NCBI RefSeq assembly: GCF_006345805.1
Contig: NC_043009.1
Span: forward strand, 54,808,001 to 54,872,000
DNA length: 64,000 bases
Source: Octopus sinensis
Lineage: Eukaryota
Reading direction: 5' to 3'
Shown here: positions 1 to 63,950 of the stretch, piece after piece
Layout of the letters: each line of letters begins with the position of its first letter
How positions within the stretch are numbered: the stretch's first letter is position 1
The notes under the pieces: model-generated
The model's input: only the letters and a program-made list of their open reading frames with translations
What the model was told of the DNA's origin: nothing
Database searches by the model: none
Program-made: the position numbers and the translations under genes

Positions 1-278
1 TTTTTTTGTTTCTTTTTCATTTTTATACTTTGTAGTTTCGATTCAGATTCTCAGAGAGATACAGATATATATGTGTGTGTGTGTGTGTTACCATTTGTAA
101 ATGAAAGAAGAGAGCACTAAATACATGTGGTGTATAGTTTTATGTATGTTTTTATTTAAACTAAGATTTCAATTGTTATTCATTCTCTTCCACTATCTGC
201 AATCTTTCAGAGCATTGACCAAAAGATCACAGGGCATGAAACTCAAATAGCGACCAAAATCTGTGTTTAAAATACACC

Positions 279-281
<3 letters not shown>

Positions 282-376
<95 letters not shown>

Positions 377-545
377 TATATATACACACATATATATAAT
401 ATATATACACACACATATACATACATATATATACATACATACATATATATACATACATACATATATGTATATATATATATATATATATATACATACATAC
501 ATATATGTATATATATATATATATATATACATACATACATATATG

Positions 546-579
<34 letters not shown>

Positions 580-771
580 ATATATATTACCTTTGCCCAT
601 ATAATAGAGTAAATGAATTGATTGCATCGCAATCCTTAACATTTATGTATTAACTTTATTGGGTACTTCACTAGCAGTATATTGGATATATGTTATCCCA
701 TGGAGGGTTGCATTTACAACACCTAACTCAATTTGTATGTACATACATACATACGTACGTACGTACGTACA

Positions 772-803
<32 letters not shown>

Positions 804-807
804 AACA

Positions 808-843
<36 letters not shown>

Positions 844-846
844 TAT
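282..846. repeat. Compound (TA)n/(CA)n/(TACA)n microsatellites (282-587 and 738-846)
   Basis: Read directly from sequence; the YI-rich ORFs here are artefacts of it. Confidence 0.95.
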
Positions 847-890
847 GTAACAAAGTGGAGTTGTAGGGTACCGCACGAGTGGAATTATAT

Positions 891-1277
891 ACGAAAGAAG
901 GTTTGAAAATGCAATTTTAAAAGATGTTTATTTACTTTACCGGTTTCACTCTTTGGGAAAAGATTGTCAAAAGTAACATGTAGAAGTTTGGTTGCGTTAA
1001 TCATTGGTTGTTGCAAATTGCTACATTACATATATACAGTCTTTGGTAACAAGGACATGTTAAGGACATAAAAAAGTTTGAACTTGTTAAACTTTTTTAT
1101 GTCTTTAACATGTCCTTGTTACCAAAGACTGTATATATGTAATGTAGCAATTTGCAACAACCAATGATTAACGCAACCAAACTTCTACATGTTACTTTTG
1201 ACAATCTTTTCCCAAAGAGTGAAACCGGTAAAGTAAATAAACATCTTTTAAAATTGCATTTTCAAACCTTCTTTCGT
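891..1277. repeat. Long inverted repeat: 189-bp arms (891-1079 and 1089-1277), 9-nt spacer
   Basis: Arms are reverse complements with one mismatch (G1064 vs T1104). Confidence 0.95.
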
Positions 1278-2178
1278 GTGTGTGTATATATATATATATA
1301 TGTATGTATGTATGTATGTATATACTGAGAGAGAGAGAGAGGTGAGTGTTAAGTTACTTTGTATGTGTTCAGAAGCTGAAGCAGTTGTAATTCTAGAAAT
1401 GATAAACTACAGTCAACAAACAAACAAACAACAACAGCAGTAGTAGTAATAGTAGTAGTAGTAATAATAGTAGTAGTAGCTTGTCTGTGTGTCTCTACGG
1501 CAACTGTCTCTCTACAAATGACAGATACTAGTTTATTGACATTGTCCATTCTAAGCCGAGATGACATTGCTTTTGCTGAATTCTTCATTTTTTTCCCCCC
1601 AGTTTTTGACAGAGAGAGAGAAGATTGGGAGAGGAGAATGGAAGGGCAGGAGGGAGGAAGGGAAAGGGCTATTCAAGAGAGGGATCTTTTTTTTTCTTGT
1701 TGTTGTTGTCATAATTATTATTATTTAAATATTCATTTGACTATTTTGTTGTCTTTTTAATTTCTCTGTTTTTTTTTCTTCTTTTGACTGTTTATCTTTT
1801 CTTACTTACACACACAGACAAACACAAGCATGCACACATACACAAACACACACACACACACACGTACATACAGTGTGTGAATCCTTCAAAATGAAGATCA
1901 TTTTATTATATCCTGTGTGTAAATATGACAGTGGAGGAGGTGAGGGTGAGTGGAGACTACTTCATTTGGGTGGCTTGGGGAAAAAAGGGCTATCTTATTC
2001 ACTTATCTTTACATATATTTATATTTATATTATTATTATTATTATTATTAACATTACATTTTGTTCACATTTTTTTTTTATATTGATTCTCTAAAACTGG
2101 TACCAATGTTCGGTGGGTTTTTGTATGAAACAGTCACAACTGAAGTGAATTAATTCATTTGGTTTGGTTTGGGTCTAT

Positions 2179-2346
2179 TCAGCTGGCCACCTGTGCAGAA
2201 ACCTCTGGTAAAGGCAGGACTCGGTTCAATTGGCTGTAACACTGCACACAGACTGGTGCATGGCGTTTGGGGAAATGACCTGGCAGAGGTAGATGAGCAG
2301 CGATACAACGGGTACAAAACACCTCACCACACTTCCAACAATGGTA
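2179..2346 (-). CDS. MTMR6: MTMR6-like last coding exon: second half of FYVE-like domain ([14 protein letters not shown]...[23 protein letters not shown])
   Basis: 168 nt, acattttag acceptor, TGA stop at 2181-2179, three CxxC pairs. Confidence 0.9.
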   Translation of the reverse strand, partial: YHCWKCGEVFCTRCIAAHLPLPGHFPKRHAPVCVQCYSQLNRVLPLPEVSAQVAS

Positions 2347-5300
2347 CTAAAATGTAGAAGAAAAAAAAATTTGATAATTTTGACAGATAGATAAAAAAAT
2401 TTTAATAAATAAATGGATAAATAGACATCATAGAATCATGGTAAAAGTAGAAACAAACAAACTCTGAAAAAAAAAATGGTTAGTTATAGGGAATTGGAGA
2501 CAATATATAGAGCAACAGCCTAGACATTTATCAAAAAACTGAATTCCAAGATGGATGGAATTTAAACCCAAATGTTAAGAGCAGTTTAAAACATACATTG
2601 GAGAACACGTCTCACCAAGAAACAGCTGTATAGAAATCACCTGCTTGTTTCCATCATTATAAGGAAAAGGCACTTGTGCTTTGCAGAACATTGGTGGCAA
2701 GCTAAACAAGTGACCTATTGCTATGGATGCCAAAGCATTGCCATACTCAAGCAGCTCATCAGAACACAACATATGTAGATCAATTCATCGGAGACACTGG
2801 ATCCCTCTCTGAACACCTCTCTCGACTAATGCAAGACCGAGATGGATGGCATGCACAAGTTGAAAATATTTGAGCAAGCTCAACTAGACGGTGATGAAGA
2901 CATTCTACATTCGTGATAGAAGAGAAGGTAACAAGAACCAGGGGAATGACAAGTTATACTGGCCTCAGTAGCATTTGGCCCTGAGGATTGACCAAAGCCT
3001 TGTGAACAGATTTGGTAAATAGAAACTGAAAGAAGATTGGTGTGTGTGAGTGAGAAAGAGTGAGAGAAAGAGAGAGCATGCCTTTGTCTCCTTGTCTTGT
3101 CATCACATGATGGTTATAAATGAGCAATCACTCATTTCCAATCTTCCATAAAAAATATATCTGGCCATTGGAAAATATTACCTGGCTTGGCAACAGGAAG
3201 GGCATCTGGTCATTGAAAAATCTGCCTCAACAGATTATGTCCAACCCATGCAAGTATGGAAAAGTAAATGGCGGCGGTGGCGGTGATATCCGACGATGAC
3301 AACAGGTGTGTTACTATTAAATGTTTGATCAGGTATCTCTGTGACATAGACTTGCTATTCTTAGTCTGACCTTGGTGTCAAATCATACATTCTACAGGCT
3401 CTGTTTCTCAGTTGTTCAATGTGGAAGCTTTTATACATTTTTATTCAAGTGTTGGGCTTCATGGAGGCAAGGTGGCTTGAGGTCCTTTTGAGCATTGGGC
3501 CTCATGGAAGCAAGTGGCTGAGTTCCTTTTGAGTGTTTGGCCTCACTGAGGCAATCATCAAGACCTTTGGCATTATATTGTGCTTGAGAAGAAGACCCAT
3601 CAAACCACGCAAAAGTGCATGGCAGATACTGGTGTTACACAAATAGCACCCATGTCTGTGGCATGTAAAAACACCATTACACTCTTGGAGTGGTTGGCGC
3701 TAGGAAGAGCATCTAATTGTAGAAAACCATGCCAAATCAGACTGGAGCCTAGTGCAGCTTTACAGCATGGCAGCCCAGTCAAACCGTTCGACCAATGCCA
3801 GCATGGACAATAGACATTAAATGCTGCTGATGATGATGATTAGAGCATTGACATGTTAGGTGCAGATCATTTGTACTCTGGGAAACCTCCCACCCAAAAT
3901 AATATTTTAAATAAAAGAAAGAATAACAGGACAACAGAAAACACACATACCCTACTGTCACACTGTACATATGCATACTGTCACATTGGACAGTATGATA
4001 TTGCTATTATATTGGATATATCCATACTGTCTCACTGGACATACTGTCACACTGGACATCTGCATACTGTCATATTGGACATGCCCATACAATCACATCA
4101 AACATATCCATACTGTAGAAAATTTCCAAAATTAAAAAGTAAAACAAAAATTATAAACTAATCGAAAAAGTTTGTTACCTTCTTTGAAAAATGTTCAAAA
4201 GAATATGCACAACTACAGTTTTGTACATTCCGGAATGGCTTCCAGTCAATAGCAACGGACGCTAATTCTTCATAGAGTTGAGCTTTTGTGAGGGGTTCGG
4301 AACTGCCAGTGACGCTTGTCAAAGACACTACACTGGATACCAGGCCGTCATCAATACCTGAACGAGACAACTGGGAACTGGATTCATCAAAGCCAGATTC
4401 AGTGTCACTCTTACCAGCAACGTGATTGTTTTCTGATTCAAAGGACTTGGTGAGGGTTAAGTTGGTACTGCTTAACTTATCTCCACCATTCTCTTCGGTA
4501 GGTTCTGTCAGTAAAACACCGTCAAGAGAGTCCATAGACGAGAAACACTGTAGCTTACGCTGGATCACTTCCTCAGAAATACCCATTCGTTTGCAAAGGT
4601 CATTGATTCTCTGAAAGAAAGAATAAAAAGAATAAAAAATCTATGTAAAGCACGGCAGTTCTCTATGAAATTTAAATTCAAATAATTATTTCAAATTTTG
4701 GCACAAGGCTGGAAATTTTGAGGGGAAGGGCCAATCAATGACATTGACCCTTGTGATCAACAGGTACTTTAAAAAAAAATTTTTTTTTTACCTGGAAAGG
4801 ATGAAAAACAAAGCTGACAGAACTAGAATTCAGAATGTAAAAAGTTGGAAGAAATGCTGTTATCTTGACAGTTAAAGATACTGGCCCAAGGTGCTACATA
4901 GTAGGACCGAACCCTAAAGCATATAGTTGGGAAGCAAACATCTTTACCACACAGCCATGCTAGGACTACTTGTATGTCATGCCTGGCACACAAAAACATT
5001 GCTCCATAACCACCTCACCCCCACTATTTTCAACAATAGCAATGTTTATGTAGGCAAAAATTCAACAAACTGTTACACAAAAGACCATATAAAAGCTATC
5101 GACTATTCAACTGCCCAGAAGTACCTCTAGTACCCTTGGACATGCTTGTAAAATAGAAAAACAGTACAGCACCCAGGACTTTCAGAAAAATATTTTTTTC
5201 ACACTCAGAATTGTCAAAGCATGGAATAAACTACCCTTGTTGATGAAACAAAGGAGAAAGATCCTTCTCGGGTGTTATAGATTCCTAGGGCTGGTTTCCC

Positions 5301-8300: not shown

Positions 8301-11049
8301 GTAAGTAATTTGCTTAACAACCACATGGTTCCGGGTTCAGTCCCACTGCGTGGCACCTTGGGCAAGTGTCTTCTACTATAGCCTCGGGCTCACCAAAGCC
8401 TTGTGAGTGGATTTGATAGGCGGAAACTGAAAGAAGCCCATTGTATATATATATATATATATATATATCTGTGTCGGTGGCACATAAAAACACCATCCGA
8501 AGACCCGGCAAGACTAGTCAGGCCATATCCCATGGCCCCTACCTGGGACGTAGTCAGTCCACCTGTGCATACCTTCCTCCTTGTGATACTTGTGAAGGCC
8601 TGTTGAGGCAAGTGAAAATCAAAATGAAATCAAAACAAATCAAATCAAATCAAATCAAAACAAATCAAAATAGATGAACATTAATGGAATTGTATCTTTG
8701 TGGTACCAGTGCCGGTGGCACACAAGAAAACCATCCGAACGTGGCCGTAGCCAGTACCGCACCGACTGGCCTCCGTGCTGTGGGCACGTAACAAACACCA
8801 TCCGATCGTGGCCGTTTGCCAGCCTCATCTGGCACCTGTGTCGGTGGCACATAAAAACACCATCCGAAGACCCGGCAAGACTAGTCAGGCCATAACCTGT
8901 GGCCCCTACCTGGGACGTAGTCAGTCCACCTGTGCATACCTTCCTTCTTGTGACACTTGTGAAGACCTGTTGAGGCAAGTGAAAATCAAAACAAATCAAA
9001 ATAGATGATCATCAATGGAATTTGTATCTTTGTGGTACCAGTGCCGGTGGCACATGGCACACAAGAAAACCATCCGAACGTGGCCGTAGCCAGTACCGCA
9101 TCGACTGGCCTCCGTGCTGTGGGCACGTAACAAACACCATCCGATCGTGGCCGTTTGCCAGCCTCATCTGGCACCTGTGTCGGTGGCACATAAAAACACC
9201 ATCCGAGCGTGGCCGTCTGCCAGCCTCGTCTGGCACCTGTGTCGGTGGCACATAAAAACACCATCCGAGCGTGGCCGTTTGCCAGCCTCGTCTGGCACCT
9301 GTGTCGGTGGCACAAAATCACCCACTACACTCTCGGAGTGGTTGGCGTTAGGAAGGGCATCCAGCTGTAGAAACACTGCCAGATCTGACTGGACTGGTGC
9401 AGCTTTCGGGCTCCCCAGACCCCAGTTGAACCGTCCAACCCATGCTAGCATGGAAAGCGGACGTTAAATGATGATGATGATGATGATGATGATGTTTGAG
9501 TATCTGAGTTTGTCCCCCCAACATCGCTTGACAACTGATGCTGGGGTGTTTACATCCCCGTAACTTAGCGGTTTGGCAAAAAGAGACCGATAGAATAAGT
9601 ACTAGGGTTACAAAGATTAAGTCCTGGGGTCGATTTGCTCAACTAAAAGGCGGTGCTCCAGCATGGTCACAGTCAAATGACTGAAACAAGTAACAGAGTA
9701 AAGTTGAATTCGTTTTTAATAGGTGGACACAGTCAACTAAATCTACCTCAGCGAAACTGGCCCTATGCTCCTTATAGGGTAATGTGGACTAACCATAATG
9801 CATGTTGATCCCTTTGTCCAACATTATAAATAGGGTTTTAGAAATAATTTACCCTGTCTAACCTGCGAGATCTAGTTTCTACTTCAAGCTGTCCAGCAAA
9901 ACCAATAAAATTTGACACCCCAATCGTAAGCACCAAAATCAATCTTAGAATGAGGAGACACCAAACTACTTACAGGGTGTTCAGTTCTGTAATTAGCTAA
10001 TGTATGATGACGGGTGAAATAAGATAAAATGAAGCAGGACATAAACATACCTGAAGATTTGGGGGCAAGTGTTCGGGAAAAGCAACCCACTTGCTTTAGT
10101 TGCCATGTTATCCTTCTGGAAAATGGGGTTGATGAAGTCGTTCATGTACTTATGGATGTAACCCCAGAGGGAGTGTGTTCTTTCTGACAACCTGTAGATA
10201 AAGAGAAGAGAAACAAAAAAAGAAAATTAAATCGAAATTTAGAGAAAAAAACATTCGACTGGAGGAGATATTGATGGTGGAAGAAACATTTAATGAGGGG
10301 TCTGCAAGTAATACAGCAAGGAGGTGAGATATGGTGAGGGTAATGATTTCAATATAAAACTACATTGCTTTTATTGTGTTAATATATTTAGATAGTGGAT
10401 TGTACAGAAATAGTAGACAACAATAAAAACAAAAAACAAATGTTCTCTTTCTCTCTTTCCACCCTCTCTCCAACTCCCTCCCTTCTCTGTTTACTGAGTT
10501 CAAACCTTATCAAATTTGACTTTACCTTTTGATAAGGGAGTTTCAATGAATTAATTCAAGCTGCTAGCAATAGCAGTCAAATCTCCTTGAAACTACATCC
10601 TACCATCAGGAAAAAGGCAAGATACATATTACTGAAGGTGGTGAACTGGGAGAATTGTTAGCATACCGAGTTCGAATTCTGCTGAGGTTGACTTAACCTT
10701 TCATCCTTTTGAGGTCAACAAAATAAGTACCAGTTGAGGGTCAACGTAACTGACTTACCACCTCCCCTGGACTTGCTGGCCTTGAGCCAAAATTTTAAAC
10801 CATCATTATTATTATTATTATTTGTCTGTCTTTACATTCTCTGAGTTCAAATTGTGTTAAAGTCACCTTAGTCTTTCATCCTTTCGAGGTTGATAAAGTA
10901 AGTACCAGTCATATACTGGGATAGATGAGATCGACTTCCCACCTCCCCCAACATTTCAGGCCTTGTGCTTTTACTAGAAAGAAGGATTATTATTATATAT
11001 TATTATTATTATTATTACTATTATTATTATCATTATTATTATTATTATC

Positions 11050-11093
<44 letters not shown>

Positions 11094-11274
11094 CATTATT
11101 ATATTATTATTTGTCTGTCTTTACATTCTCTGAGTTCAAATTGTGTTAAAGTCACCTTAGTCTTTCATCCTTTCGAGGTTGATAAAGTAAGTACCAGTCA
11201 TATACTGGGATAGATGAGATCGACTTCCCACCTCCCCCAACATTTCAGGCCTTGTGCTTTTACTAGAAAGAAGG

Positions 11275-11312
<38 letters not shown>

Positions 11313-11340
11313 TATTATTATCATTATTATTATTATTATC

Positions 11341-11384
<44 letters not shown>

Positions 11385-11403
11385 CATTATTATTATTATT
11401 ATC

Positions 11404-11435
<32 letters not shown>

Positions 11436-11451
11436 CATCATTATCATTATT

Positions 11452-11501
<50 letters not shown>

Positions 11502-11566
11502 TATTATTATTATCATTATTATCATTATTATTATTATCATTATTATTATTATCATTATTATTATTA

Positions 11567-11612
<46 letters not shown>

Positions 11613-14600
11613 CATTATTATTATTATTATTATTGTCATTATTATTATTATTGTCTTTATTATTATTGTTGTTGTTATTATTATTATTATATTATTATTA
11701 TTGTTATTGTTATTATTATTATTAAGGTGGCAAGCTGGCAGGACTGTTAGCATGCTGGAAAAATGCTTAGCAGCATTTCGTCCATCTTTACATTCTGAAT
11801 GTGAATTCTCGCAGGGTCAATGAGTACAGGTTAAGTACTGAGGTCAAAGTAGTCGACCTCCACCTCCCCTCAAAAAAGCTAGCCATGTGCCAGCCAAAAT
11901 TTGAAATCATCGTTGCTGCCACCACCATCACTACCATCATTGACTTTGCCTTTCATCTTTTAAGGGTTGATAAAATGGTACCAGTCAATTGATTATAGCC
12001 CCTACCTGCAAAAATAACCGGAATTGATTATATACCCTACCTGCAAAAATAACTGGGTTCGGTTATATCCCCTACTTTGTACCTATATTAGAAACAACTA
12101 TTATCATTACTGTTATTATTACCAAAGATGTTTTAATGAACCAATGAAGAAGGTTATATGTGTTTGCTTAACCCCTTTTTATAAAAAAGAGAGACACATA
12201 TCCATTTCTAGATAAATTATGTCTGATGGAAGTAGATAAAGAAACAAGATGACTGCCACTACAGCATCTTTGATTCCAGTGCCAAACTGGGTACAATGAC
12301 AACAATATTAAGTTATTCATACCTTAGATCAATACGATCCTTCTCACAGTTTCCAATAAAGGTACCATATTGACATGAGAAAACATGATCGTGAAGAACC
12401 AGCAGGAAACGTTCGTTGAATTGAAAAGCACAGGGGTACTGGTGGGTCATCTGCCATACTGCGTCAATGAATTGTGTGAACACCGGGGAAACTTCTTTAG
12501 GGTCCACTGTGCCCAGAAAACCACATCGGTCTGTAAACTTATGTCCAAAAGCCAGCCATTCTTTTTCAATAAGGTCCTGAAATAGAATTAGAATTGTAAT
12601 GTATCATGAAATGATTTTTAGGGCTTAAAACAGCCAAATAATTGACAAAATAATATAATTATAATTCCTGATAAAAGACAATTGACAATAATGAGTTGAT
12701 TATAATTTTGAAGCATACCAAAGTTGACAGATTGTGTTAGAGAAAGACAGAGCTATATTAGTACACATTGTGATAGTGCAACTGTTAGGAGGCCACCAAT
12801 CTAAAGATGAGATATTTATAAAGCCTGTAAACAGGCAGTTTTTAAGAGGGCATGTGTGTGTTTTTGTTTCAAGTAACAATATAAAAATGCTTTTTTTTTT
12901 TTTAATGATGTGGAGCAGATGTTGACTCACCTGAAATCCTTTTAATGTTCTATAGTAAGGGTCCAACATGAGAGAAGCCAAAGAACATGTTTGAGCTGTG
13001 CGGTCCCAACCATCTGAACAGTGTACAAGGACACTGACACCTTCAGAGACAGCCTTCAAAATATAACGGGGAAAAGATGATTAAACTGATAGGAACAAAT
13101 CAATTACACACACCTCACAACACACACATTTACACTTCAACAATCAAATACACACACATCTGACCACACACATACACACTTCACCACACATGCACTCATA
13201 CCTCACCATGCACATACATACATCTTACCATACACACACACACACCCTGCCACACACTTTGCCACATACATACACATACCTCACCATAGGTATGCACATC
13301 TCACTACACACACACACCTCTCACTGCATACTCTCTTTTACTTGTTTCAGTCATTTGACTGTGGCCATGTGAGCACCGCCTTTAGTCAAGCAAATCGACC
13401 CCAGGACTTATTCTTTGTAAGCCTAGTACTTACTCTATCGGTGTCTTTTGCTGAACCGCTAAGTTATGGGGACATAAACACACCAGCATCAGTTGTCAAG
13501 TGATGTTGGGGAGACAAACACAGACACATAAACACATACATACATATATATATATATATACATATAAACGATGGGCTTCTTTCAGTTTCCGTCTACCAAA
13601 TCCACTCACAAGGCTTTGGTCGGCCCGAGGCTATAGTACAAGACACTTGCCCAAGGTGCCACGCAGTGGGATTGAACCTGGAACCATGTGGTAGGTAAGC
13701 AAGCTACTTACCACACAGCCACTCCTACGCCTGTGCATATACATGCCTTTATTGTTGCCAATGTCTCTATAACTCCATTTTTAGTGGAGAATGTACAGCC
13801 AGAGAAATTTCTATTGCTAATATCTATACAGCCTTTGCTAATCTGTATAGTTCTACTTTAATTTAACCCTTTAGCATTCAGTTTAATCCACCAAATGCAA
13901 TGCTTTTGCATTCACATTGTTTTTAACTAACCATGCATTAGCTCATAGCTTTGTGCTTTCGATGATGTGATTGTTAATTTTTAGAATTACACTGTAGGGT
14001 AGATTTGAGAAGCTAGATCTGGCCAGTTTGAACATAAGACAGGCAGAATATTTGAGCCAGATATGGCCAGTTTAAATGCTAAAGAGTTAAATAGAGCAAA
14101 AGAAGTTAAAATCAGAGTAAGTAAATATTAGCCTCGGCACCTGTGCAGGTGGCACGTAAAAAGCACCCACTACACTCACGGAGTGGTTGGCGTTAGGAAG
14201 GGCATCCAGCTGTAGAAACACTGCCAGATTAGACTGGGCCTGGCGCAGCCTACTGGCTCCCCAGACCCCAGTTGAACCGTCCAACCCATGCTAGCATGGA
14301 AAACGGACGTTAAACGATGATGATGATGATGAAGACACACAGAAAAGAAATTATAAAATACAGAGAGTGGATTTGCTGTATGAATCCCAAACTTGAATTA
14401 ATGGCATTAGGAAGAAGGTAGAGGAATCATTTTCTTGAATACTTCACAACAGAGACATCTAATAGCTGAGTGTGACTGCAATGTAACATACAGCCGAACA
14501 CCAATATATCATAAATCTTTTATCTTTTAATAGTTTTAGTCATTGGACTGCAGTCATGTCGCAGTGGTAACCATAGAAAGCATGCCAAATCAGACTGGAG

Positions 14601-17600
14601 TCTGGTGCATCCTGCCAGCTTGCCAGCTCTGGTCACACCATCCAACCATTGCCAGCATGGACAATGGACGTTAAGTGATGATGATGATGAAGTTGACTAC
14701 AGTACTTACTTATTTAAGTCTGGTACTTATTCTATCAGTCTCTTTTGCCAAAAATGCTACATTACGGGACATAAACAGACCAACACTTGTTGTCAAATAG
14801 TGGTGGGGAGACAAACACACACACATGACAGGCTCTGATAGTTTCTGTCTACCAAATTCACTCACAAAGCACTGGTCAGCCTGAGGCTAAAGCAAAGGGT
14901 GCTACACAGTGAGACGGAACCCAAAAAGCATGTGGTCGCAATGCAAGCTTCTTCTTAACCACAGCTCAAACCAACAACAACAACAAAAATAGAAAAAACA
15001 GATTTACTTTAGCAATGAAAACTGAAGTTTCCATGACAGCTCGCACATGCTTTAACCAGCCACTGCTCTCCAGACCTGATAGGAATGCAGACATGGAAGG
15101 ATTCTTCAACTCACAGACTGAAAAATGGAAAAAGAAAAAAATAAAGGAAAACCATAACAAAGAATTAATAAAGACAAAAAAAAAAGATACAAAAAAGATA
15201 CAATAATAAAACAAGAAAAATAGCAGCAAATGACAGAAGCTGACTTGCATATAATTAGTTTGGTTTACTTTTGGTCTGAAGAAGAGAATTTTGTGAGAAA
15301 CAGTTAATAAAACATTTATATGAAATAAGTAGGCTTTAGTATAACCAATAGGTACTAAATCATTCAGCGAATACTCATTCAAAGTAAACAGAGATAATAA
15401 TTTCTTTTGTCTTGGCACACAAGACTCTTGTTTTCATTGATTTTGTCCTTCTAAGTGGTATATTATTGGCATATTGATTTCTTCCTTGGACACAAGGCCA
15501 AATTTCATTCAAGTAGGGCATTATAGATAACTGGATCAGCTCCAGCATATGACACACACACCTACATTAAGTTCTCTGAGGTAAGATAAAATTTTGAAAA
15601 GATACAACAGAGACAACTGCACAATCCATCTCAGTATTTTACTGAGACGTATATTATCTCCTTTGAAGGGGGCAAGTAACAGTGACATTTGAACTCAGAG
15701 ATAAAACTTCATAATGTAAGACATTTAGTTTGATTCTTTATTGTGTTTGCCAACTCATTGTTTTGTGGTAAGTAGCTTGCTTACCAGCCACATGGTTCCG
15801 GGTTCAGTCCCACTGCGTGGCATCTTGGGCAAGTGTCTTCTACTATAGCCTCGGGCTGACCAAAGCCTTTTGAGTGGATTTGGTAGGCGGAAACTGAAAG
15901 AAGCCCGTCGTATATATATGTTTGTGTGTCTGTGTTTGTCCCCCCAACATCGCTTGACAACCGATGCTGGTGTGTTTATGTCCCCGTAACTTAGCGGTTT
16001 GGCAAAAGAGACCGATAGAATAAGTACTAGGCTTCCAAAGAAGAAGTCCTGAAGTCGAGTTGCTTGACTAAAGGTGGTGCTCCAGCATGGCTGCAGTCAA
16101 ATGACTGAAACAAGTAAAGGAGCAATCTGAGGAAGATGACGTCATTCTTGACCCAAGCAAGATTTGAACATGAAGATGTAAAACAGCAAACAACATGCTT
16201 TAGCTCATTGTCTTACAATAAAAAAAACAAGTAAAGTAAATTCACAGACATTATTGTCTTGGGTCTTAGGACTCTTAGGGCCAGTTACCTGGTTTCCATA
16301 ACATATAAATGACTGGATTCACAACATTTGCACCTGAATGGGACACAACTCCATTGCAGGGCTGCTCATTTACAGCTGAGTGGACTGGAGCAATGCCATA
16401 TGAAATGAAGTATTTTGCTCAAGAACATAACACATCACTCAGTCTGGAAATAGGAAACCATGATTTTGCAATCATGAGTGCAACACCTTAACCACTAAGC
16501 CATGCACTTTCACTGTCTTACAGCACATATGTTATTAATTTTTATACTCTTAGGAGGATGATGTCATGTTTGACCACACCAACAATTTGAGCTTGTAAAT
16601 CTAAGACATCAAATCATCTCTAAGTCAATGACCAAGCCTATACCTTTGGCAGCACCTGTAAGACCTTCTTCAGGTTAACTGAAAATTATTGCCGACTGCT
16701 TGTGGCCAAGCTTTATTTTAATACAATGAATACAAGTTTAATCCTTTGCCTGTCCTGTGTATCGCATGTGAGACACAAGACATATTTCCCTATCATCCAT
16801 GCATCATATACAATACATGAGTAACTTGGTGCTTATGAAAGGATGTTTTATCTTTCTTACTCAGAGCATATGAAACAAGGGCTAACTAAAAATCTGAAAA
16901 CAAGCATGTTAGTGTAAGACAAACTTATAAAAATACTTTGGAACAAAGGGTTAAAGAGGTGAATTATTGACCTTCATGATCACTGGTTCAAATCTCATAA
17001 CAACCATTGTGCAATATATATCTGAAAATATATGGTATGTAATTTTGCTTGCTTTATTTTGTTTGTCAGATGAACAAAACAGCCCTAGTCCAACTTCATT
17101 GTTAAATGGTTAGCAGTAGGAAGATTATCAAACTATTGTCTGGAAGAGCATCTCATTCTTGTTAACATCAATATATATGTATAAAAAACACACACACATC
17201 ATCATCATCATCATCGTTTAACGTCCGTTTTCCATGCTAGCATGGGTTGGATGGTTTGACCGGGGTCTGGGAAGCCAGGAGGCTGCACCAGGCTCCAGTC
17301 TGATCTGGCAGTGTTTCTACAGCTGGATGCCCTTCCTAACGCCAACCACTCAGTGAGTGTAGTGGGTGCTTTTTACGTGCCAGGGGAGGCTGGCAACGGC
17401 CACGATCAGTTGGTGGTTTTTATGTAACACCAACATGGAAGCCAGTCAAGGCGGCGCTTGACAAATACAGAAAAAGATGTTCGGTTATTTGTTACTGATG
17501 TGAGCTCAAAATGTGATTCAGTGGAGTGTAGCAGATGAGTGACACTACATATGAGTCAATGCTTTATCTGTTGCCAGAGTGAACTTAAAATGTGGATCAG

Positions 17601-37900: not shown

Positions 37901-40900
37901 CAACTTTATTGAGGTGGGGAAAAGATTTCAAAAGAGAGAAAAGAAAAAAGGAGTTCTTTGTAAAGAACTTTTACTAATTTTCCCATTGTAATCATTATCT
38001 TATGTAGAGACAAAAGTGTAAACAGCTAAATAGGGGAACAACAAGCAAGCACCATAAAAGGGGAGCCTTTATATGGTGTCTCATTCTGTAAGAAATAGCC
38101 AAATCAAGGTGGCGAGCTGGCATACTTGTTAGCACACCTGGCGAAATGCGTAGCCATATTTCGTCTGCCGTTACATTCTGAGTTCAAATTCCGCCAAGGT
38201 CGACTTTACCTTTCATCCTTTTGGGGTCGATAAATTAAGTACCAGTTATGCACTGGGGTCAATGTAATCAACTTAATCCCTTTGTCTGTCCTTGTATGTC
38301 CCCTCTATGTTTAGCCCCTTGCGGGCAATAACGAAATAAGAAATAGCCAAATCACACCTTGTTATAAGCCAAGAAGGAAGCCTTGGTGGTTCCTTGTCCT
38401 GTAAGAAATAGCAACCAAATCCCTCTCCAAGCACATTCCATTGTCATAAATAAATAAATAAATAAATAAGGAAGGAAATGCCACATAATATAGCCCTAGA
38501 TGTACACCATAATAAAGATGAGATGGTCATGGATAGAATTCCTTTCATCTATCATAAGTCTCCTTGACCCCTGAACTACCTGCAGCTAAACCACAATGAC
38601 AAAAGATTGAGGGTGCATAACCTGTTAATATTACAACGCCGCCTCGACTGGCTTCTGTACCGGTGGCACATAAAAAGCACCATCCGAACGTGGCCGATGC
38701 CAGCACCGCCTCGACGGCTTCTGTACCGGTGGCACATAAAAAGCACCATCCGAACGTGGCCGATGCCAGCACCGCCTTGGCTGGCTTCCGTGCTGGTGCA
38801 TGTTAAAAGCACAACCGATCGTGGCCGATGCCATGCAAGCACCGCCTCGACTGGCTTCTGTACCGTGGCACATAAAAAGCACCATCCGAACGTGGCCGAT
38901 GCCAGCACCAGCCTCGACTGCTTCTGTACCGGTGGCAACATAAAAAGCACCATCCGAACGTGGCCGATGCCAGCGCCGCCTCGACTGGCTTCTGTACCGG
39001 TGGCACATAAAAAGCACCATCCGAACTGGCCGATGCCAGCACCGCCTCGACTGGCTTCTGTACCGGGGCACATAAAAAGCACCATCCGAACGTGGCCGAT
39101 GCCAGCACCGCCTCGACTGGCTTCTGTACCGGTGGCAACATAAAAAGCACCATCCGAACGTGGCCGATGCCAGCGCCGCCTCGACTGGCTTCTGTACCGG
39201 TGGCACATAAAAAGCACCATCCGAACGTGGCCGATGCCAGCAACGCCTCGACTGGCTTCTGTACCGGTGGCACATAAAAACACCATCCGAACGTGGCCGA
39301 TGCCAGCACCGCCTCGACTGGCTTCTGTACCGGTGGCACATAAAAAGCACCATCCGAACGTGGCCGATGCCAGCACCGCCTTGGCTGGCTTCCGTGCTGG
39401 TGGCATGTTAAAAGCACCAACCGATCGTGGCCGATGCCAGCACGCTCGACTGGCTTCTGTACGGTGGCACATAAAAAGCACCATCCGAACGTGGCCGATG
39501 CCAGCACCGCCTCGACTGGCTTCTGTACCGGTGGCACATAAAAAGCACCATCCGAACGTGGCCGATGCCAGCGCCGCCTCGACTGGCTTCTGTACCGGTG
39601 GCACATAAAAAGCACCATCCGAACGTGGCCGATGCCAGCACCGCCTCGACTGGCTTCTGTACCGGTGGCACATAAAAAGCACCATCCGAACGTGGCCGAT
39701 GCCAGCACCGCCTCGACTGGCTTCTGTACCGGTGGCACATAAAAAGCACCATCCGAACGTGGCCGATGCCAGCGCCGCCTCGACTGGCTTCTGTACCGGT
39801 GGCACATAAAAAGCACCATCCGAACGTGGCCGATGCCAGCACCGCCTCGACTGGCTTCTGTACCGGTGGCACATAAAAAGCACCATCCGAACGTGGCCGA
39901 TGCCAGCGCCGCCTTGGCTGGCTTCCGTGCTGGTGGCACATAAAAAGCACCATCCGAACGTGGCCGATGCCAGCACCGCCTTGGCTGGCTTCCGTGCTGG
40001 TGGCATGTTAAAAGCACCAACCGATCGTGGCCGATGCCAGCACCGCCTCGACTGGCTTCTGTACCGGTGGCACATAAAAAGCACCATCCGAACGTGGCCG
40101 ATGCCAGCACCGCCTCGACTGGCTTCTGTACCGGTGGCACATAAAAAGCACCATCCGAACGTGGCCGATGCCAGCGCCGCCTCGACTGGCTTCTGTACCG
40201 GTGGCACATAAAAAGCACCATCCGAACGTGGCCGATGCCAGCACCGCCTCGACTGGCTTCTGTACCGGTGGCACATAAAAAGCACCATCCGAACGTGGCC
40301 GATGCCAGCACCGCCTCGACTGGCTTCTGTACCGGTGGCACATAAAAAGCACCATCCGAACGTGGCCGATGCCAGCGCCGCCTCGACTGGCTTCTGTACC
40401 GGGGCACATAAAAAGCACCATCCGAACGTGGCCGATGCCAGCACCCGCCTCGACTGGCTTCTGTACCGGTGGCACATAAAAAGCACCATCCGAAGTGGCC
40501 GATGCCAGCACGCCTCGACTGGCTTCTGTACCGGTGGCACATAAAAAGCACCATCGAACGTGGCCGATGCCAGCGCCGCCTCGACTGGCTTCTGTACCGG
40601 TGGCACATAAAAAGCACCATCCGAACGTGGCCGATGCCAGCACCGCCTCGACTGGCTTCTGTACCGGTGGCACATAAAAAGCACCATCCGAACGTGGCCG
40701 ATGCCAGCACCGCCTCGACTGGCTTCTGTACCGGTGGCACATAAAAAGCACCATCCGAACGTGGCCGATGCCAGCGCCGCCTCGACTGGCTTCTGTACCG
40801 GTGGCACATAAAAAGCACCATCCGAACGTGGCCATGCCAGCACCGCCTCGACTGGCTTCTGTACCGTGGCACATAAAAAGCACCATCCGAACGTGGCCGA

Positions 40901-42127
40901 TGCCAGCACCGCCTCGACTGGCTTCTGTACCGGTGGCACATAAAACACCATCCGAACGTGGCCGATGCCAGCACGCACCGCCTCGACTGGCTTCTGTACC
41001 GGTGGCACATAAAAAGCAACCATCCGAACGTGGCCGATGCCAGCACCGCCCGCCTCGACTGGCTTCTGTAACCGGTGGCACATAAAAAGCACCATCCGAA
41101 CGTGGCCGATGCCAGCACCACCGCCTCGACTGGCTTCTGTACCGGTGGCACATAAAAAGCACCATCCGAACGTGGCCGATGCCAGCGCCGCCTCGACTGG
41201 CTTCTGTACCGGTGGCACATAAAAAGCACCATCCGAACGTGGCCGATGCCAGCGCCGCCTTGGCTGGCTTCCGTGCTGGTGGCATGTTAAAAGCACCAAC
41301 CGATCGTGGCCGATGCCAGCGCCGCCTCGACTGGCTTCTGTACCGGTGGCACTAAAAAGCACCATCCGAACGTGGCCGATGCCAGCGCCGCCTCGACTGG
41401 CTTCTGTACCGGTGGCACATAAAAAGCACCATCCGAACGTGGCCGATGCCAGCGCCGCCTTGGCTGGCTTCCGTGCTGGTGGCATGTTAAAAGCACCAAC
41501 CGATCGTGGCTGATGCCGGACTTCCCTGGCACCAGTGCAGGTGGCACATAAAATGCACCCACTACACTCGCGGAGTGGTTGGCGTTAGGAAGGGCATCCA
41601 GCTGTAGAAACACTGCCAGATCAGGCTGGAGCCTGGTGCAGCCCCTGGCTTCCCAGACCCCGGTCGAACCATCCAACCTGTGCTAGTGCGGAAAACGGAC
41701 GTTAAACGATGATGATGATGATGATTCTCATCATGTTTCCAGGTTGAACATATTTGACTTCTAATGTTCAATTCCCCAGTTTCTATTTCAGTAAGACATC
41801 TAAAGTTGGAGTGGGACAATGCAGTTTACAACTCTAAGCACTGTCAGCTCTGTGAAATGCAAAGCAAACCAACATTTATGCAGCTGCTCAACCTGTTTGA
41901 ATTATAGTAGCCAACCTCCTGCAATCTGTTCTTTATTGTCTTGAAACATTGGAGTGGAGTGATCAACATCACACAACACATGTGCAAGAATTCAGGTTGA
42001 ATAGTAATGGGAACCTTAATTAATTATATTTCTGTTATTTAAATATTGAGAAGTCTATGGGTACTGTTACCTCCCCTTTAGACAAAATGATCTTTTAAAA
42101 AGTTGTCAGAAAAAAATTACCAAAATG

Positions 42128-52359: not shown

Positions 52360-52783
52360 ATTATTTCTTTATTGCCCACAAGGGGCTACACATAGAGGGG
52401 ACAAACAAGGACAGACAAAAGGATTAAGTCGATTACATCGACCCCAGTGCGTAACTGGTACTTACTTAATCGACCCAGAAAGGATGAAAGGCTAAGTCGA
52501 CCTCAGCGGAATTTGAACTCAGAATGTAAAGACAGAAGAAATACCTATTTCTTTACTACCCACAACAGTCTAAACACAGAGAGGACAAACAAGGACAGAT
52601 AAACGGATTAAGTTGATTATATTGACCCCAGTGCATAACTGGTACTTATTTAAAATCAACCCAGAAAGGATGAAAGGCTAAGTCGACCTTGGCAGAATTT
52701 GAACTCAGAACGTAAAGACAGAAGAAATACCACTAAGCATTTCGCCCGGCGTGCAAACGTTTCTGCCAGCTTACTTCCTTCAG
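52360..52783 (-). mobile_element. Head-to-tail SINE B dimer inserted into an older plus-strand SINE B
   Basis: 18-bp TSD AAATGCTTAGCAGCATTT at 52342-52359 and 52784-52801. Confidence 0.85.
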
Positions 52784-63005: not shown

Positions 63006-63213
63006 AAAAAAAAAAATATATGCAAAAAAATTATTTGTGGTTGGAACATCTTTTGGTCATAGGTCTGTCAGATCAGGGTTGACCTGGGGTTAAACAAATA
63101 CAACAAAAGAAACAGTATTGTAACCTCCAAATGATCATCACCATCAATATTACCATCATCATCAACAGCAGCAGAAACATAAGCAAAAAATTACTTTTTT
63201 TTCTTTTTAGGCA

Positions 63214-63950
63214 TAGGTGCAAATATGGTTCATAGGCACAAGCATGGCTCATAGGCGCTACCATGGCTCATAGGCACAAGCATGGCTCATAGGCACAAGC
63301 ATGGCTCATAGGCGCTACCATGGCTCATAGGCACAAGCATGGCTCATAGGTGCAAGTATGGCTCATAGGTACAAGCATGGCTCATAGGTGCAAGCATGGC
63401 TCATAGGTACAAGCATGGCTCATAGGTACAAGCATGGCTCATAGGTACAAGCATGGCTCATAGGTGCAAGCATGGCTCATAGGTACAAGCATGGCTCATA
63501 GGTACAAGCATGGCTCATAGGTACAAGCATGGCTCATAGGTGCAAGCATGGCTCATAGGTACAAGCATGGCTCATAGGTACAAGCATGGCTCATAGGTGC
63601 AAGCATGGCTCATAGGTGCAAGCATGGCTCATAGGTACAAGCATGGCTCATAGGTACAAGCATGGCTCATAGGCACAAGCATGGCTCATAGGTGCAAGTA
63701 TGGCTCATAGGTACAAGCATGGCTCATAGGTACAAGCATGGCTCATAGGTACAAGCATGGCTCATAGGTACAAGCATGGCTCATAGGCACAAGCATGGCT
63801 CATAGGTGCAAGTATGGCTCATAGGTACAAGCATGGCTCATAGGTACAAGCATGGCTCATAGGTACAAGCATGGCTCATAGGCACAAGCATGGCTCATAG
63901 GTACAAGCATGGCTCATAGGTGCAAGCATGGCTCATAGGTGCAAGCATGA
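63214..63950 (+). repeat. 19-bp minisatellite, about 38-39 units (taggtacaagcatggctca), running into a SINE head at the window edge
   Basis: Period 19 read directly; variant cores tacaa/tgcaa/cacaa/cgctac. Confidence 0.95.

What the first reader, a model, noticed from the sequence alone, without database searches (positions are those of the whole stretch)
891..1277. 189-bp near-perfect hairpin about 0.9 kb downstream of the MTMR stop codon
Seen: arms 891-1079 and 1089-1277 are reverse complements with one mismatch around a 9-nt spacer, flanked on both sides by (TA)/(TACA) microsatellites. Minus-strand AATAAA hexamers occur before it (about 1902-1907), inside the distal arm (927-932) and after it (about 655-660). 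Known: coleoid cephalopods have very extensive ADAR A-to-I editing, and long perfect duplexes are preferred ADAR and Dicer substrates. Inference: a long 3' UTR isoform using a distal poly(A) site would carry an editable or siRNA-producing duplex that a short isoform lacks. In DNA it is an AT-rich cruciform candidate. It may have arisen as a fold-back of a transposon end.
Basis: partly seen in the sequence, partly recalled or inferred. Interest (0 to 1): 0.7.

Follow-up and report, generated by a model that had tools for sequence, protein, structure and literature searches.

The report
Young DNA palindrome downstream of MTMR gene
A real, nearly perfect 387-bp DNA palindrome sits in a microsatellite cluster about 0.9 kb past the end of a myotubularin-related gene; it looks like a recent, probably functionless insertion or duplication lying beyond the gene's main poly(A) site, so it is a structural curiosity, not a demonstrated RNA-editing or siRNA device.

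Summary
Arms 891-1079 and 1089-1277 are reverse complements with one mismatch (G1064/T1104) and a 9-nt spacer. Shuffled sequence gives stems of only 9-10 nt. The element is non-coding, has no other copy in the 64-kb window, no target-site duplication, no protein or Rfam relatives, and no match in any DNA collection scanned.

The neighbouring minus-strand gene is an MTMR3/4-type phosphatase with a FYVE finger (stop codon 2181->2179). Its first AATAAA lies 271 nt after the stop and is followed by a (GU)n-rich downstream element. It is much the best poly(A) site. A related species (L003) has its first AATAAA at 281 nt.

That species also has a TA/CA microsatellite cluster at the same distance downstream, but no palindrome and nothing arm-like. 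The palindrome is therefore a young, lineage-specific addition to unstable microsatellite DNA, beyond the likely 3'UTR end.

Most likely it is a by-product of fold-back (snap-back) synthesis or a templated insertion. A MITE-like transposon is the main rival. If read-through transcripts include it, it would be an ADAR substrate. siRNA production is disfavoured because molluscs lack a dedicated endo-siRNA pathway. Cruciform extrusion is disfavoured by the 9-nt spacer and only moderate AT content. No transcription or population data could be obtained.

The parts
891..1079 (.). Left (gene-distal) arm of the palindrome, 189 nt
   Evidence: the repeat finder I1; direct comparison
1080..1088 (.). 9-nt spacer GAACTTGTT. 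It is partly self-complementary (AAC-TT-GTT) with a bulged G1080, so the true symmetry axis lies between 1084 and 1085
   Evidence: Sequence read directly; the DNA fold closes a 5-nt loop
1089..1277 (.). Right (gene-proximal) arm, 189 nt, transcribed first on a minus-strand read-through transcript
1064..1064 (.). The only arm mismatch: G1064 opposite T1104 (C.A on the gene-sense RNA, G.U on the antisense RNA)
846..890 (.). 45 nt of unique sequence between the left microsatellite and the palindrome. It ends in AATTATAT and is single-copy in the window
282..845 (.). Left part of the microsatellite cluster: (AT)n with CA/TACA interruptions at 282-587 and (TACA)26 at 740-845
   Evidence: TRF; census
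1278..1324 (.). Right flanking microsatellite (GT)4(AT)n(GTAT)n. Joined to 883-890 it recreates the AATT..(GT)n(AT)n motif typical of the orthologous cluster in L003
927..932 (-). Minus-strand AATAAA inside the second-transcribed arm; it would be paired with 1236-1241 in the hairpin
   Evidence: pairing follows from the palindrome geometry
1902..1907 (-). Proximal AATAAA, 271 nt after the stop; the best poly(A) signal
   Evidence: conserved position in L003 (first AATAAA 281 nt after its stop)
1808..1863 (-). (AC)n on the plus strand, which is a (GU)n-rich downstream element of the proximal poly(A) site on the minus strand
   Evidence: TRF; GU content 0.74
2179..2346 (-). Last coding exon of the MTMR3/4-type gene (FYVE finger C-terminus ...QVAS*), stop TGA at 2181->2179. 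The 5' boundary at 2346 was read by eye from an AG acceptor
   Evidence: orthologous exon in L003 at 13055-13294

Best explanation
This is a genuine, evolutionarily young, lineage-specific, non-coding 387-bp palindrome lodged in a TA/TACA/GT microsatellite cluster. It lies downstream of the MTMR3/4-type gene and beyond the gene's main, positionally conserved poly(A) site. I think it most likely arose as a replication or repair accident. (TA)n-type repeats stall forks and break. A free 3' end then snapped back on a tiny central inverted repeat (AAC-TT-GTT), copied its own nascent strand for about 190 nt, and was rejoined to the microsatellite with no more than 1 nt of homology. The copied strand was either local or had been templated from elsewhere. 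The product is a neutral structural variant with no dedicated function. As consequences, not purposes: any read-through transcript of either strand would fold into a 189-bp A-form duplex and be promiscuously deaminated by ADAR, and the DNA is a potential but spacer-damped hairpin or cruciform site. Shown here: the structure, its youth (one substitution and one central indel), its single-copy status in the window, the absence of a TSD, its absence from a related species that has the same downstream layout, and the strength of the proximal poly(A) site. Inferred: the fold-back mechanism, neutrality, and the fate of any transcript.
For: The structure is far beyond chance. The arms differ by 1 substitution in 189 nt, and symmetry runs nearly to the centre with one bulged base; this geometry is what snap-back priming on a short hairpin produces (small loops, median 3-5 nt, PMC7467729). 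No TSD of 2 bp or more at any boundary shift, only a 1-nt T homology. No second copy of the arm in 64 kb, and the flanks are unique. No coding potential or protein relatives. No Rfam family reaches its gathering score. The related-species locus L003 is collinear through three exons and has the same layout of stop, AATAAA at about 280 nt, and microsatellite cluster from about 760 nt, but no near-perfect palindrome and no arm-like sequence. Joining the two flanks recreates a motif, AATT N0-6 (GT)n, that occurs 11 times in L003's cluster and once elsewhere in the window. The proximal poly(A) site is much the strongest.
Against: No ancestral single-arm or empty allele could be recovered, so fold-back synthesis is inferred from geometry only. 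If the empty-site reading is right, neither arm is native to the locus; that fits a mobile element or an ectopic template better than a simple local inverted duplication. The 3-bp central inverted repeat is a weak primer. L003 is distant (74-79% identity in exons and unalignable outside them), so absence there shows only that the feature is not anciently conserved. Neutrality is assumed, not tested. Copy number in the rest of the genome is unknown.
Confidence: 0.42

Rival explanations
1. It is a copy of a palindromic MITE or foldback-type non-autonomous DNA transposon, possibly born by fold-back of one transposon end, that recently inserted into the microsatellite cluster.
For: It is small (387 bp), non-coding, made entirely of inverted repeat, and AT-leaning, which is the general shape of palindromic MITEs such as Made1 (PMC1784062). 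MITE-type entries are annotated in Octopus vulgaris (65 families, PMC13282606). Joining the flanks gives a natural-looking empty site, so both arms may be foreign to the locus. The left flank ends in TA and the right flank starts TG, one transition away from a TA duplication.
Against: There is no intact TSD even though the arms are 99.5% identical, and a very recent insertion should still have one. The termini (ACGAAAG...) resemble no canonical superfamily end that I know of. There is no second copy in 64 kb, whereas a SINE-like family has at least 20 copies there. No hits in any protein or DNA collection, though those collections hold almost no cephalopod DNA. Symmetry running to within 2 nt of the centre is unusual for MITEs, which normally have a unique core.
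Confidence: 0.27
2. One reading: the palindrome is part of an alternative long 3'UTR of the MTMR gene, where it serves as an ADAR hyper-editing, nuclear-retention or stability element that the short isoform lacks.
For: It lies on the gene's downstream side, 901 nt after the stop, with no intervening gene seen. A 189-bp near-perfect duplex is an ideal ADAR substrate (established biochemistry). Octopus A-to-I editing is concentrated in intron and 3'UTR hairpins (PMC9699675). A minus-strand AATAAA lies downstream of it at 660->655.
Against: A strong proximal poly(A) site lies 271 nt after the stop, with a (GU)n downstream element, at a position matched in L003. The distal hexamers have weak contexts. 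The required UTR of at least 1288 nt (about 1540 nt to the 660 site) is roughly 4 times the reported octopus median. The palindrome is absent from a related species and nearly free of arm divergence, so there is no sign of long-term selection. The gene's introns already contain many inverted SINE-like pairs that would serve as ordinary ADAR substrates.
Confidence: 0.1
3. It is an assembly or sequencing artefact: a fold-back chimeric read, or a polishing error, created the second arm.
For: Palindromes next to long microsatellites are hard to sequence and assemble. Fold-back chimeras are a known read-level artefact (my own knowledge). No independent copy of this locus from the same species could be obtained.
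Against: The palindrome is internal, with different unique sequence on each side. The window has no gaps, and long arrays are resolved (N = 0; a 2.9-kb array of 67-bp units), which suggests a good long-read assembly. The arms are short compared with read-scale fold-backs. The arms differ by a substitution and a central indel, which a mechanical fold-back copy polished by the same reads would not be expected to show.
Confidence: 0.1
4. It is a hairpin-RNA (hpRNA) or young miRNA-type gene producing Dicer-dependent small RNAs.
For: It has the shape of a long perfect hairpin. There are sub-threshold Rfam matches to perfect-hairpin plant miRNA precursors (MIR1509, 62.7 bits).
Against: All Rfam matches are below the gathering scores (87-100 bits) and reflect generic hairpin shape. 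Molluscs, including O. bimaculoides, show no dedicated endo-siRNA pathway or siRNA-type Dicer (PMC12479628). The arm has no detectable target gene or relative. The stem is far too long and too perfect for an animal miRNA precursor.
Confidence: 0.03

Closest known systems
Fold-back inversions / short inverted duplications primed by ssDNA hairpins (yeast foldback GCRs, PMC7467729; human inverted duplications, PMC3907307)
   Same: Two inverted copies are joined through a very short spacer that contains a small inverted repeat. There is little or no homology at the outer junction. The site is in break- and stall-prone repeat DNA.
   Different: The described cases are large, chromosome-scale rearrangements that need secondary stabilisation. 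This one is a 387-bp interstitial event with normal sequence on both sides, so it needs a second switch back or capture at a break. No ancestral allele is available to prove it.
Palindromic MITEs (e.g. human Made1, source of the mir-548 family, PMC1784062) and foldback elements
   Same: A short, non-coding element made almost entirely of inverted repeat that folds into a long hairpin if transcribed.
   Different: There is no target-site duplication, no second copy in the window, no recognisable superfamily terminus, and almost no unique core.
Human palindromic AT-rich repeats (PATRR11/17/22, PMC1851657)
   Same: A near-perfect palindrome in the 190-600 bp size range, single-locus, in repeat-rich DNA. 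It is expected to vary in size and symmetry between individuals.
   Different: It is only 69.5% AT, with no AT-rich core. It has a 9-nt central spacer, the kind of feature that abolished cruciform extrusion and instability in PATRR22-quasi. No rearrangement data exist.
ADAR-edited inverted-repeat hairpins in 3'UTRs (inverted Alu pairs in mammals; 3'UTR hairpins in C. elegans, e.g. PMC4317174)
   Same: A long intramolecular dsRNA-forming inverted repeat on the 3' side of a protein-coding gene. It would be promiscuously edited if transcribed.
   Different: Those hairpins are built from two dispersed repeat copies with 10-20% arm divergence and long loops, and they are known to be transcribed. 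Here the arms are 99.5% identical and single-copy, with a 9-nt loop, and they lie beyond the best poly(A) site with no transcription evidence.

Membership tests
MITE / foldback DNA transposon | Terminal inverted repeats | tested here: met
   The whole element is an inverted repeat. This is trivially met by any palindrome.
MITE / foldback DNA transposon | Target-site duplication flanking the element | tested here: not met
   No direct repeat of 2 bp or more at boundary shifts of 0-3 nt. There is only a 1-nt T homology, and TA/TG is one mismatch short.
MITE / foldback DNA transposon | Multiple dispersed copies in the genome | tested here: inconclusive
   No other copy in the 64-kb window or in 20 kb of a related species. 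The rest of the genome was not available, and the public collections scanned hold essentially no cephalopod DNA.
MITE / foldback DNA transposon | Small size and no coding capacity | tested here: met
   387 bp. The longest open frame is 45 codons, with no Pfam or database relatives.
Fold-back (snap-back) inverted duplication | Inverted copies joined by a short spacer that contains a small hairpin-forming inverted repeat | tested here: met
   The 9-nt spacer contains AAC-TT-GTT, and symmetry runs to a TT centre with one bulge. The stem is only 3 bp, so as a primer it is weak.
Fold-back (snap-back) inverted duplication | An ancestral or allelic state with a single arm at the same locus | not testable with these tools
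   No same-species or close-species copy of the locus could be retrieved. L003 is too diverged to align outside the exons.
PATRR-type palindromic AT-rich repeat | Near-perfect palindrome of about 190-600 bp | tested here: met
   387 bp, 188 of 189 positions paired; size range from PMC1851657.
PATRR-type palindromic AT-rich repeat | Markedly AT-rich sequence | tested here: not met
   69.5% AT against 61.4 +/- 7.5% for the window; 8.5% of window tiles are as AT-rich; the profile along the arm is flat at 63-74%.
PATRR-type palindromic AT-rich repeat | Central symmetry without a spacer (needed for cruciform extrusion and instability) | tested here: not met
   A 9-nt spacer plus a mismatch 16 nt from it. 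The comparable PATRR22-quasi did not extrude and was not unstable (PMC1851657).
ADAR-edited 3'UTR inverted-repeat hairpin | Long intramolecular dsRNA-forming inverted repeat | tested here: met
   RNA fold of -309.8 kcal/mol, a continuous 189-bp stem.
ADAR-edited 3'UTR inverted-repeat hairpin | Lies within the mature transcript (3'UTR) | not testable with these tools
   No RNA data. The sequence leans against: a strong proximal poly(A) site at 271 nt, at a position matched in L003.
ADAR-edited 3'UTR inverted-repeat hairpin | Clustered A-to-G differences between RNA and DNA | not testable with these tools
   No RNA-seq access.
hpRNA / endo-siRNA locus | The host has a Dicer/Argonaute pathway that processes long hairpins into siRNAs, and the locus yields 20-24-nt duplex reads | not testable with these tools
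   No small-RNA data. The literature argues against such a pathway in molluscs (PMC12479628).
miRNA precursor families (Rfam MIR1509, MIR1511 and others) | Score at or above the Rfam gathering threshold | tested here: not met
   Best scores are 62.7 bits against 87 and 50.6 against 100.

The most novel reading that the evidence does not exclude
A newly born, lineage-specific 189-bp perfect hairpin has been captured by a neural or otherwise regulated long 3'UTR isoform of an MTMR3/4-type phosphoinositide phosphatase gene. There it acts as an ADAR hyper-editing, nuclear-retention or stability switch. That would be a cephalopod counterpart of inverted-Alu 3'UTR regulation, caught at its origin, and would show that snap-back insertions at microsatellites can create regulatory dsRNA elements de novo.
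Probability: 0.06. Interest if true: 0.5.

Novelty: new member of a known kind. Interest (0 to 1): 0.22.

Why it matters
As it stands, very little. It is one more young palindrome in repeat-rich animal DNA. It is useful mainly as a marker of microsatellite-associated instability and as a region to treat with care in assembly and PCR. It would matter more if long-UTR transcripts cross it, because it would then be an unusually clean natural ADAR substrate: 189 bp, one A.C mismatch, single-copy. That would allow study of promiscuous editing and dsRNA handling in an animal that edits heavily and apparently lacks an endo-siRNA pathway. If a single-arm or empty allele is found in the population, the locus would document how short interstitial palindromes are born.

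Tried and rejected
1. I looked for other copies of the arm in the window with blastn at word size 7; only chance matches of 24 nt or less turned up.
2. I searched the 5.8-billion-protein collection with the longest arm reading frame, and with a composite of all non-microsatellite reading-frame segments from 590-2180. Neither found anything, so no Logan/ENA contig carrying the locus could be reached that way.
3. An exhaustive HMMER search with the arm ORF gave one spurious hit, to a bacterial SpaA-repeat adhesin.
4. Exact look-ups of window ORFs 2179-2322(-), 1152-1328(+) and 1349-1588(-) were not on record. The window's own genome is not in the collection.
5. Two independent arm k-mers (31 and 27 nt) gave 0 hits against the metagenome, prokaryote-genome and viral collections, as expected for animal DNA.
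6. Logan contigs L001/L002 (SRR11869390/91) come from a related species (about 82% DNA identity). They cover only the 4158-4586 exon. No paper mentions those run accessions.
7. Rfam gave only sub-threshold generic hairpin or microsatellite matches.
8. I tested whether the mirror symmetry extends beyond the arms. Both sides run outward into (AT)n(GTAT)n, but there is no symmetry beyond that (score 14 against a shuffle mean of 17.8 +/- 2.6). The larger-palindrome idea is dropped.
9. I looked for a paralogous empty site; the flanks are single-copy in the window.
10. A Helitron reading (which would need no TSD) is rejected by eye: there is no 5' TC or 3' CTRR end and no A/T host flanks.
11. A viral hairpin telomere or ITR is rejected: no viral ORFs lie nearby.
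12. The stop-codon coordinate used in my script was 2 nt off. The correct stop is 2181->2179, and distances in this report use the corrected value.

Full report

Yes, in every particular. The repeat finder reports arms 891-1079 and 1089-1277, 189 nt, 99% complementary, 9 nt apart. A base-by-base comparison finds one mismatch, G1064 opposite T1104, and the spacer GAACTTGTT. Complementarity stops abruptly at 890/1278.

The minus strand folds as RNA into one continuous stem at -309.8 kcal/mol, against -74 +/- 5 for shuffles (z = -50). The plus strand folds as DNA at -222.6 kcal/mol (z = -44.5). Dinucleotide shuffles of 20 kb yield longest perfect stems of only 9-10 nt.

There are two refinements:
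- The spacer is itself nearly palindromic (GTTT-G-AAC TT GTT-AAAC), so symmetry runs to a TT centre with one bulged G1080. The two arms therefore differ by one substitution and one central 1-nt indel.
- The element is only moderately AT-rich: 69.5% against 61.4 +/- 7.5% for the window, with no AT-rich core.

**2. Surroundings**

The minus strand carries a myotubularin-related phosphatase gene. An exon at 12700-13059 encodes the [10 protein letters not shown] active site (Pfam Myotub-related, E = 9.6e-21). The last two exons encode a FYVE finger (E = 8.5e-13), which makes it MTMR3/4-like. The TGA stop is at 2181->2179, 901 nt from the palindrome.

The window is repeat-rich:
- A SINE-like family of about 345 bp has at least 20 copies, several as inverted pairs inside the gene's introns.
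- There are long tandem arrays.

The palindrome arm is unrelated to any of these, and there is no second copy of it in the window. Its flanks are also single-copy. The palindrome sits inside a dense cluster of TA/TACA/GT microsatellites spanning about 282-1324.

**3. Is it in the 3'UTR?**

This could not be tested directly. The sequence evidence leans against it being in the main transcript.
- The first AATAAA, 271 nt after the stop, is followed by CA and a (GU)n tract. GU content at +10..+60 is 0.74, with 24 TG/GT dinucleotides.
- Every distal hexamer has an ordinary context, with GU 0.34-0.54.
- The hexamer at 932->927 lies in the second-transcribed arm and would be base-paired as soon as it was made.
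- A UTR of at least 1288 nt would be needed to include the hairpin, about 1540 nt if the 660 site is used. The median 3'UTR measured in Octopus vulgaris is 350-380 nt (PMC9699675).

**4. A related species**

The protein collection held no annotated orthologue, only single-exon calls on short contigs. One cluster member, P0011, lies on a 56-kb ENA contig, from which I fetched 20 kb as L003.

L003 is collinear with the window through three exons at 74-79% identity. It encodes the same C-terminus...HAPVC...ASQVAS*.

Its layout downstream of the stop matches the window's:
- The first AATAAA is 281 nt after the stop.
- There are several hundred nt of unique sequence.
- A complex TA/CA microsatellite cluster starts about 760 nt after the stop.

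L003 has no near-perfect palindrome. All its inverted repeats are 70-80% microsatellite self-matches. It has nothing resembling the arm. Non-coding sequence does not align at this distance, so this shows only three things: the palindrome is not an old conserved feature, the microsatellite cluster is positionally conserved, and the proximal poly(A) signal is at a matching position.

One further hint comes from the motif AATT N0-6 (GT)n. It occurs 11 times in L003, all within that cluster, and once elsewhere in the window. Joining the palindrome's two flanks recreates it as AATTATAT|GTGTGTGT(AT)n. This suggests a clean 387-bp insertion with no more than 1 nt of junction homology. My rough estimate of the chance probability is about 0.06. 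An alternative boundary at 846 gives an equally natural (AT)n(GT)4(AT)n junction, so I treat this as suggestive only.

**5. What it most likely is**

The element is a young, lineage-specific, non-coding palindrome in unstable microsatellite DNA. The evidence for its origin is as follows:
- The arms are almost identical.
- Symmetry runs almost to the centre.
- The spacer is short and contains a small inverted repeat.
- There is no target-site duplication.
- The site is in fork-stalling repeats.

Taken together, these fit snap-back (fold-back) synthesis best. Fold-back inversions are known to be primed by short ssDNA hairpins with loops of a few nt (PMC7467729). The copied strand may have been local or templated from elsewhere, and it was then rejoined by end joining.

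I put this at about 0.42. The main rival is a MITE or foldback transposon copy, at about 0.27. That reading fits the shape of the element and the possible clean empty site. It is contradicted by the missing TSD in such a young element, the lack of a unique core, and the absence of other copies in the window, although genome-wide copy number is unknown.

An assembly artefact (about 0.1) is unlikely. The palindrome is internal, has different unique flanks, lies in a gap-free window with long arrays resolved, and its arms are not identical. It still cannot be excluded without the reads.

**6. What it does**

Most likely nothing that has been selected for.

If either strand is transcribed through it, a 189-bp duplex forms. 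About 130 adenosines are in paired positions. By established ADAR biochemistry such a duplex is promiscuously edited. On the gene-sense RNA the single mismatch is A.C, a favoured ADAR context (my own knowledge). However, any transition in a perfect palindrome gives A.C on one strand and G.U on the other, so this carries no weight.

siRNA production is disfavoured. A survey of 32 molluscs, including O. bimaculoides, found no dedicated endo-siRNA pathway or siRNA-type Dicer (PMC12479628).

Cruciform extrusion is disfavoured by the spacer. A PATRR22 variant with a 9-nt spacer and a few near-centre mismatches neither extruded under physiological conditions nor was unstable (PMC1851657). The moderate AT content points the same way.

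The gene already has ordinary ADAR substrates in the form of inverted SINE-like pairs in its introns.

**7. Comparison with known kinds and novelty**

It works like, and probably is, a small interstitial fold-back inverted duplication or insertion.
- It resembles palindromic MITEs in shape but fails the TSD test.
- It resembles PATRRs in size and perfection but fails on AT-richness and central symmetry.
- It resembles 3'UTR inverted-repeat ADAR substrates in potential RNA structure, but its inclusion in a transcript is unknown.
- No Rfam family reaches threshold.

It is a new instance of a known kind.

**8. Verdict**

Interest is low (0.22).

The most novel reading not excluded is a newly born hairpin recruited into a regulated long 3'UTR as an ADAR-dependent switch. 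I give it about 6% probability.

The organism was not independently identified.

Noticed in passing
window 13371-13715 (+) and 15764-16082 (-); also 6962-7300/8297-8474 and 59758-60104/61080-61445: A SINE-like family of about 345 bp has at least 20 copies in the window (65-92% identity), in both orientations. One inverted pair (85-93% complementary, about 2 kb apart) brackets an MTMR coding exon at about 14990-15090 (minus strand, '..[26 protein letters not shown]'). This is an inverted-Alu-like arrangement that could form intronic dsRNA, and so is a candidate for ADAR editing or exon circularisation.
   Followed up: partly
window 38639-41517; related units at 9122-9314 and about 8.4-9.5 kb and 54.9-55.2 kb: A 2.9-kb tandem array with a 67-bp period (42.9 copies, 93% matches). 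It creates long spurious ORFs ('[18 protein letters not shown]...'). Shorter arrays of a related 62-bp unit lie elsewhere in the window, next to SINE-like copies.
   Followed up: partly
window 10808-11724: (ATT)150 at 11275-11724 overlaps a 289-bp x 2.1 tandem duplication (10808-11400, 98% matches). It lies inside an MTMR intron.
   Followed up: no
window 63212-63949 and 52362-52731: A minisatellite with a 19-bp period (38.8 copies, 93%) and a 184-bp x 2 tandem duplication.
   Followed up: no
L003 14055-14920 and 15240-15540, compared with window 282-1324: A complex TA/CA microsatellite cluster lies at nearly the same distance downstream of the MTMR stop codon in two species whose non-coding DNA no longer aligns. 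In L003 it is built from a recurring ATAATT(GT)n(TA)n unit in both orientations. Positional persistence of a microsatellite cluster over this divergence is unexpected.
   Followed up: partly
L003 19080-20456: The related-species contig carries retroelement ORFs about 6 kb downstream of the MTMR gene: a faint zf-CCHC hit, then RVT_1 reverse transcriptase running off the end of the locus.
   Followed up: no
window 270-850 and 1270-1345: The (TA)n/(TACA)n microsatellites give many sub-threshold Rfam matches to mir-297, mir-466, mir-1277 and mir-3149-type models. These are low-complexity artefacts, not miRNA genes.
   Followed up: yes
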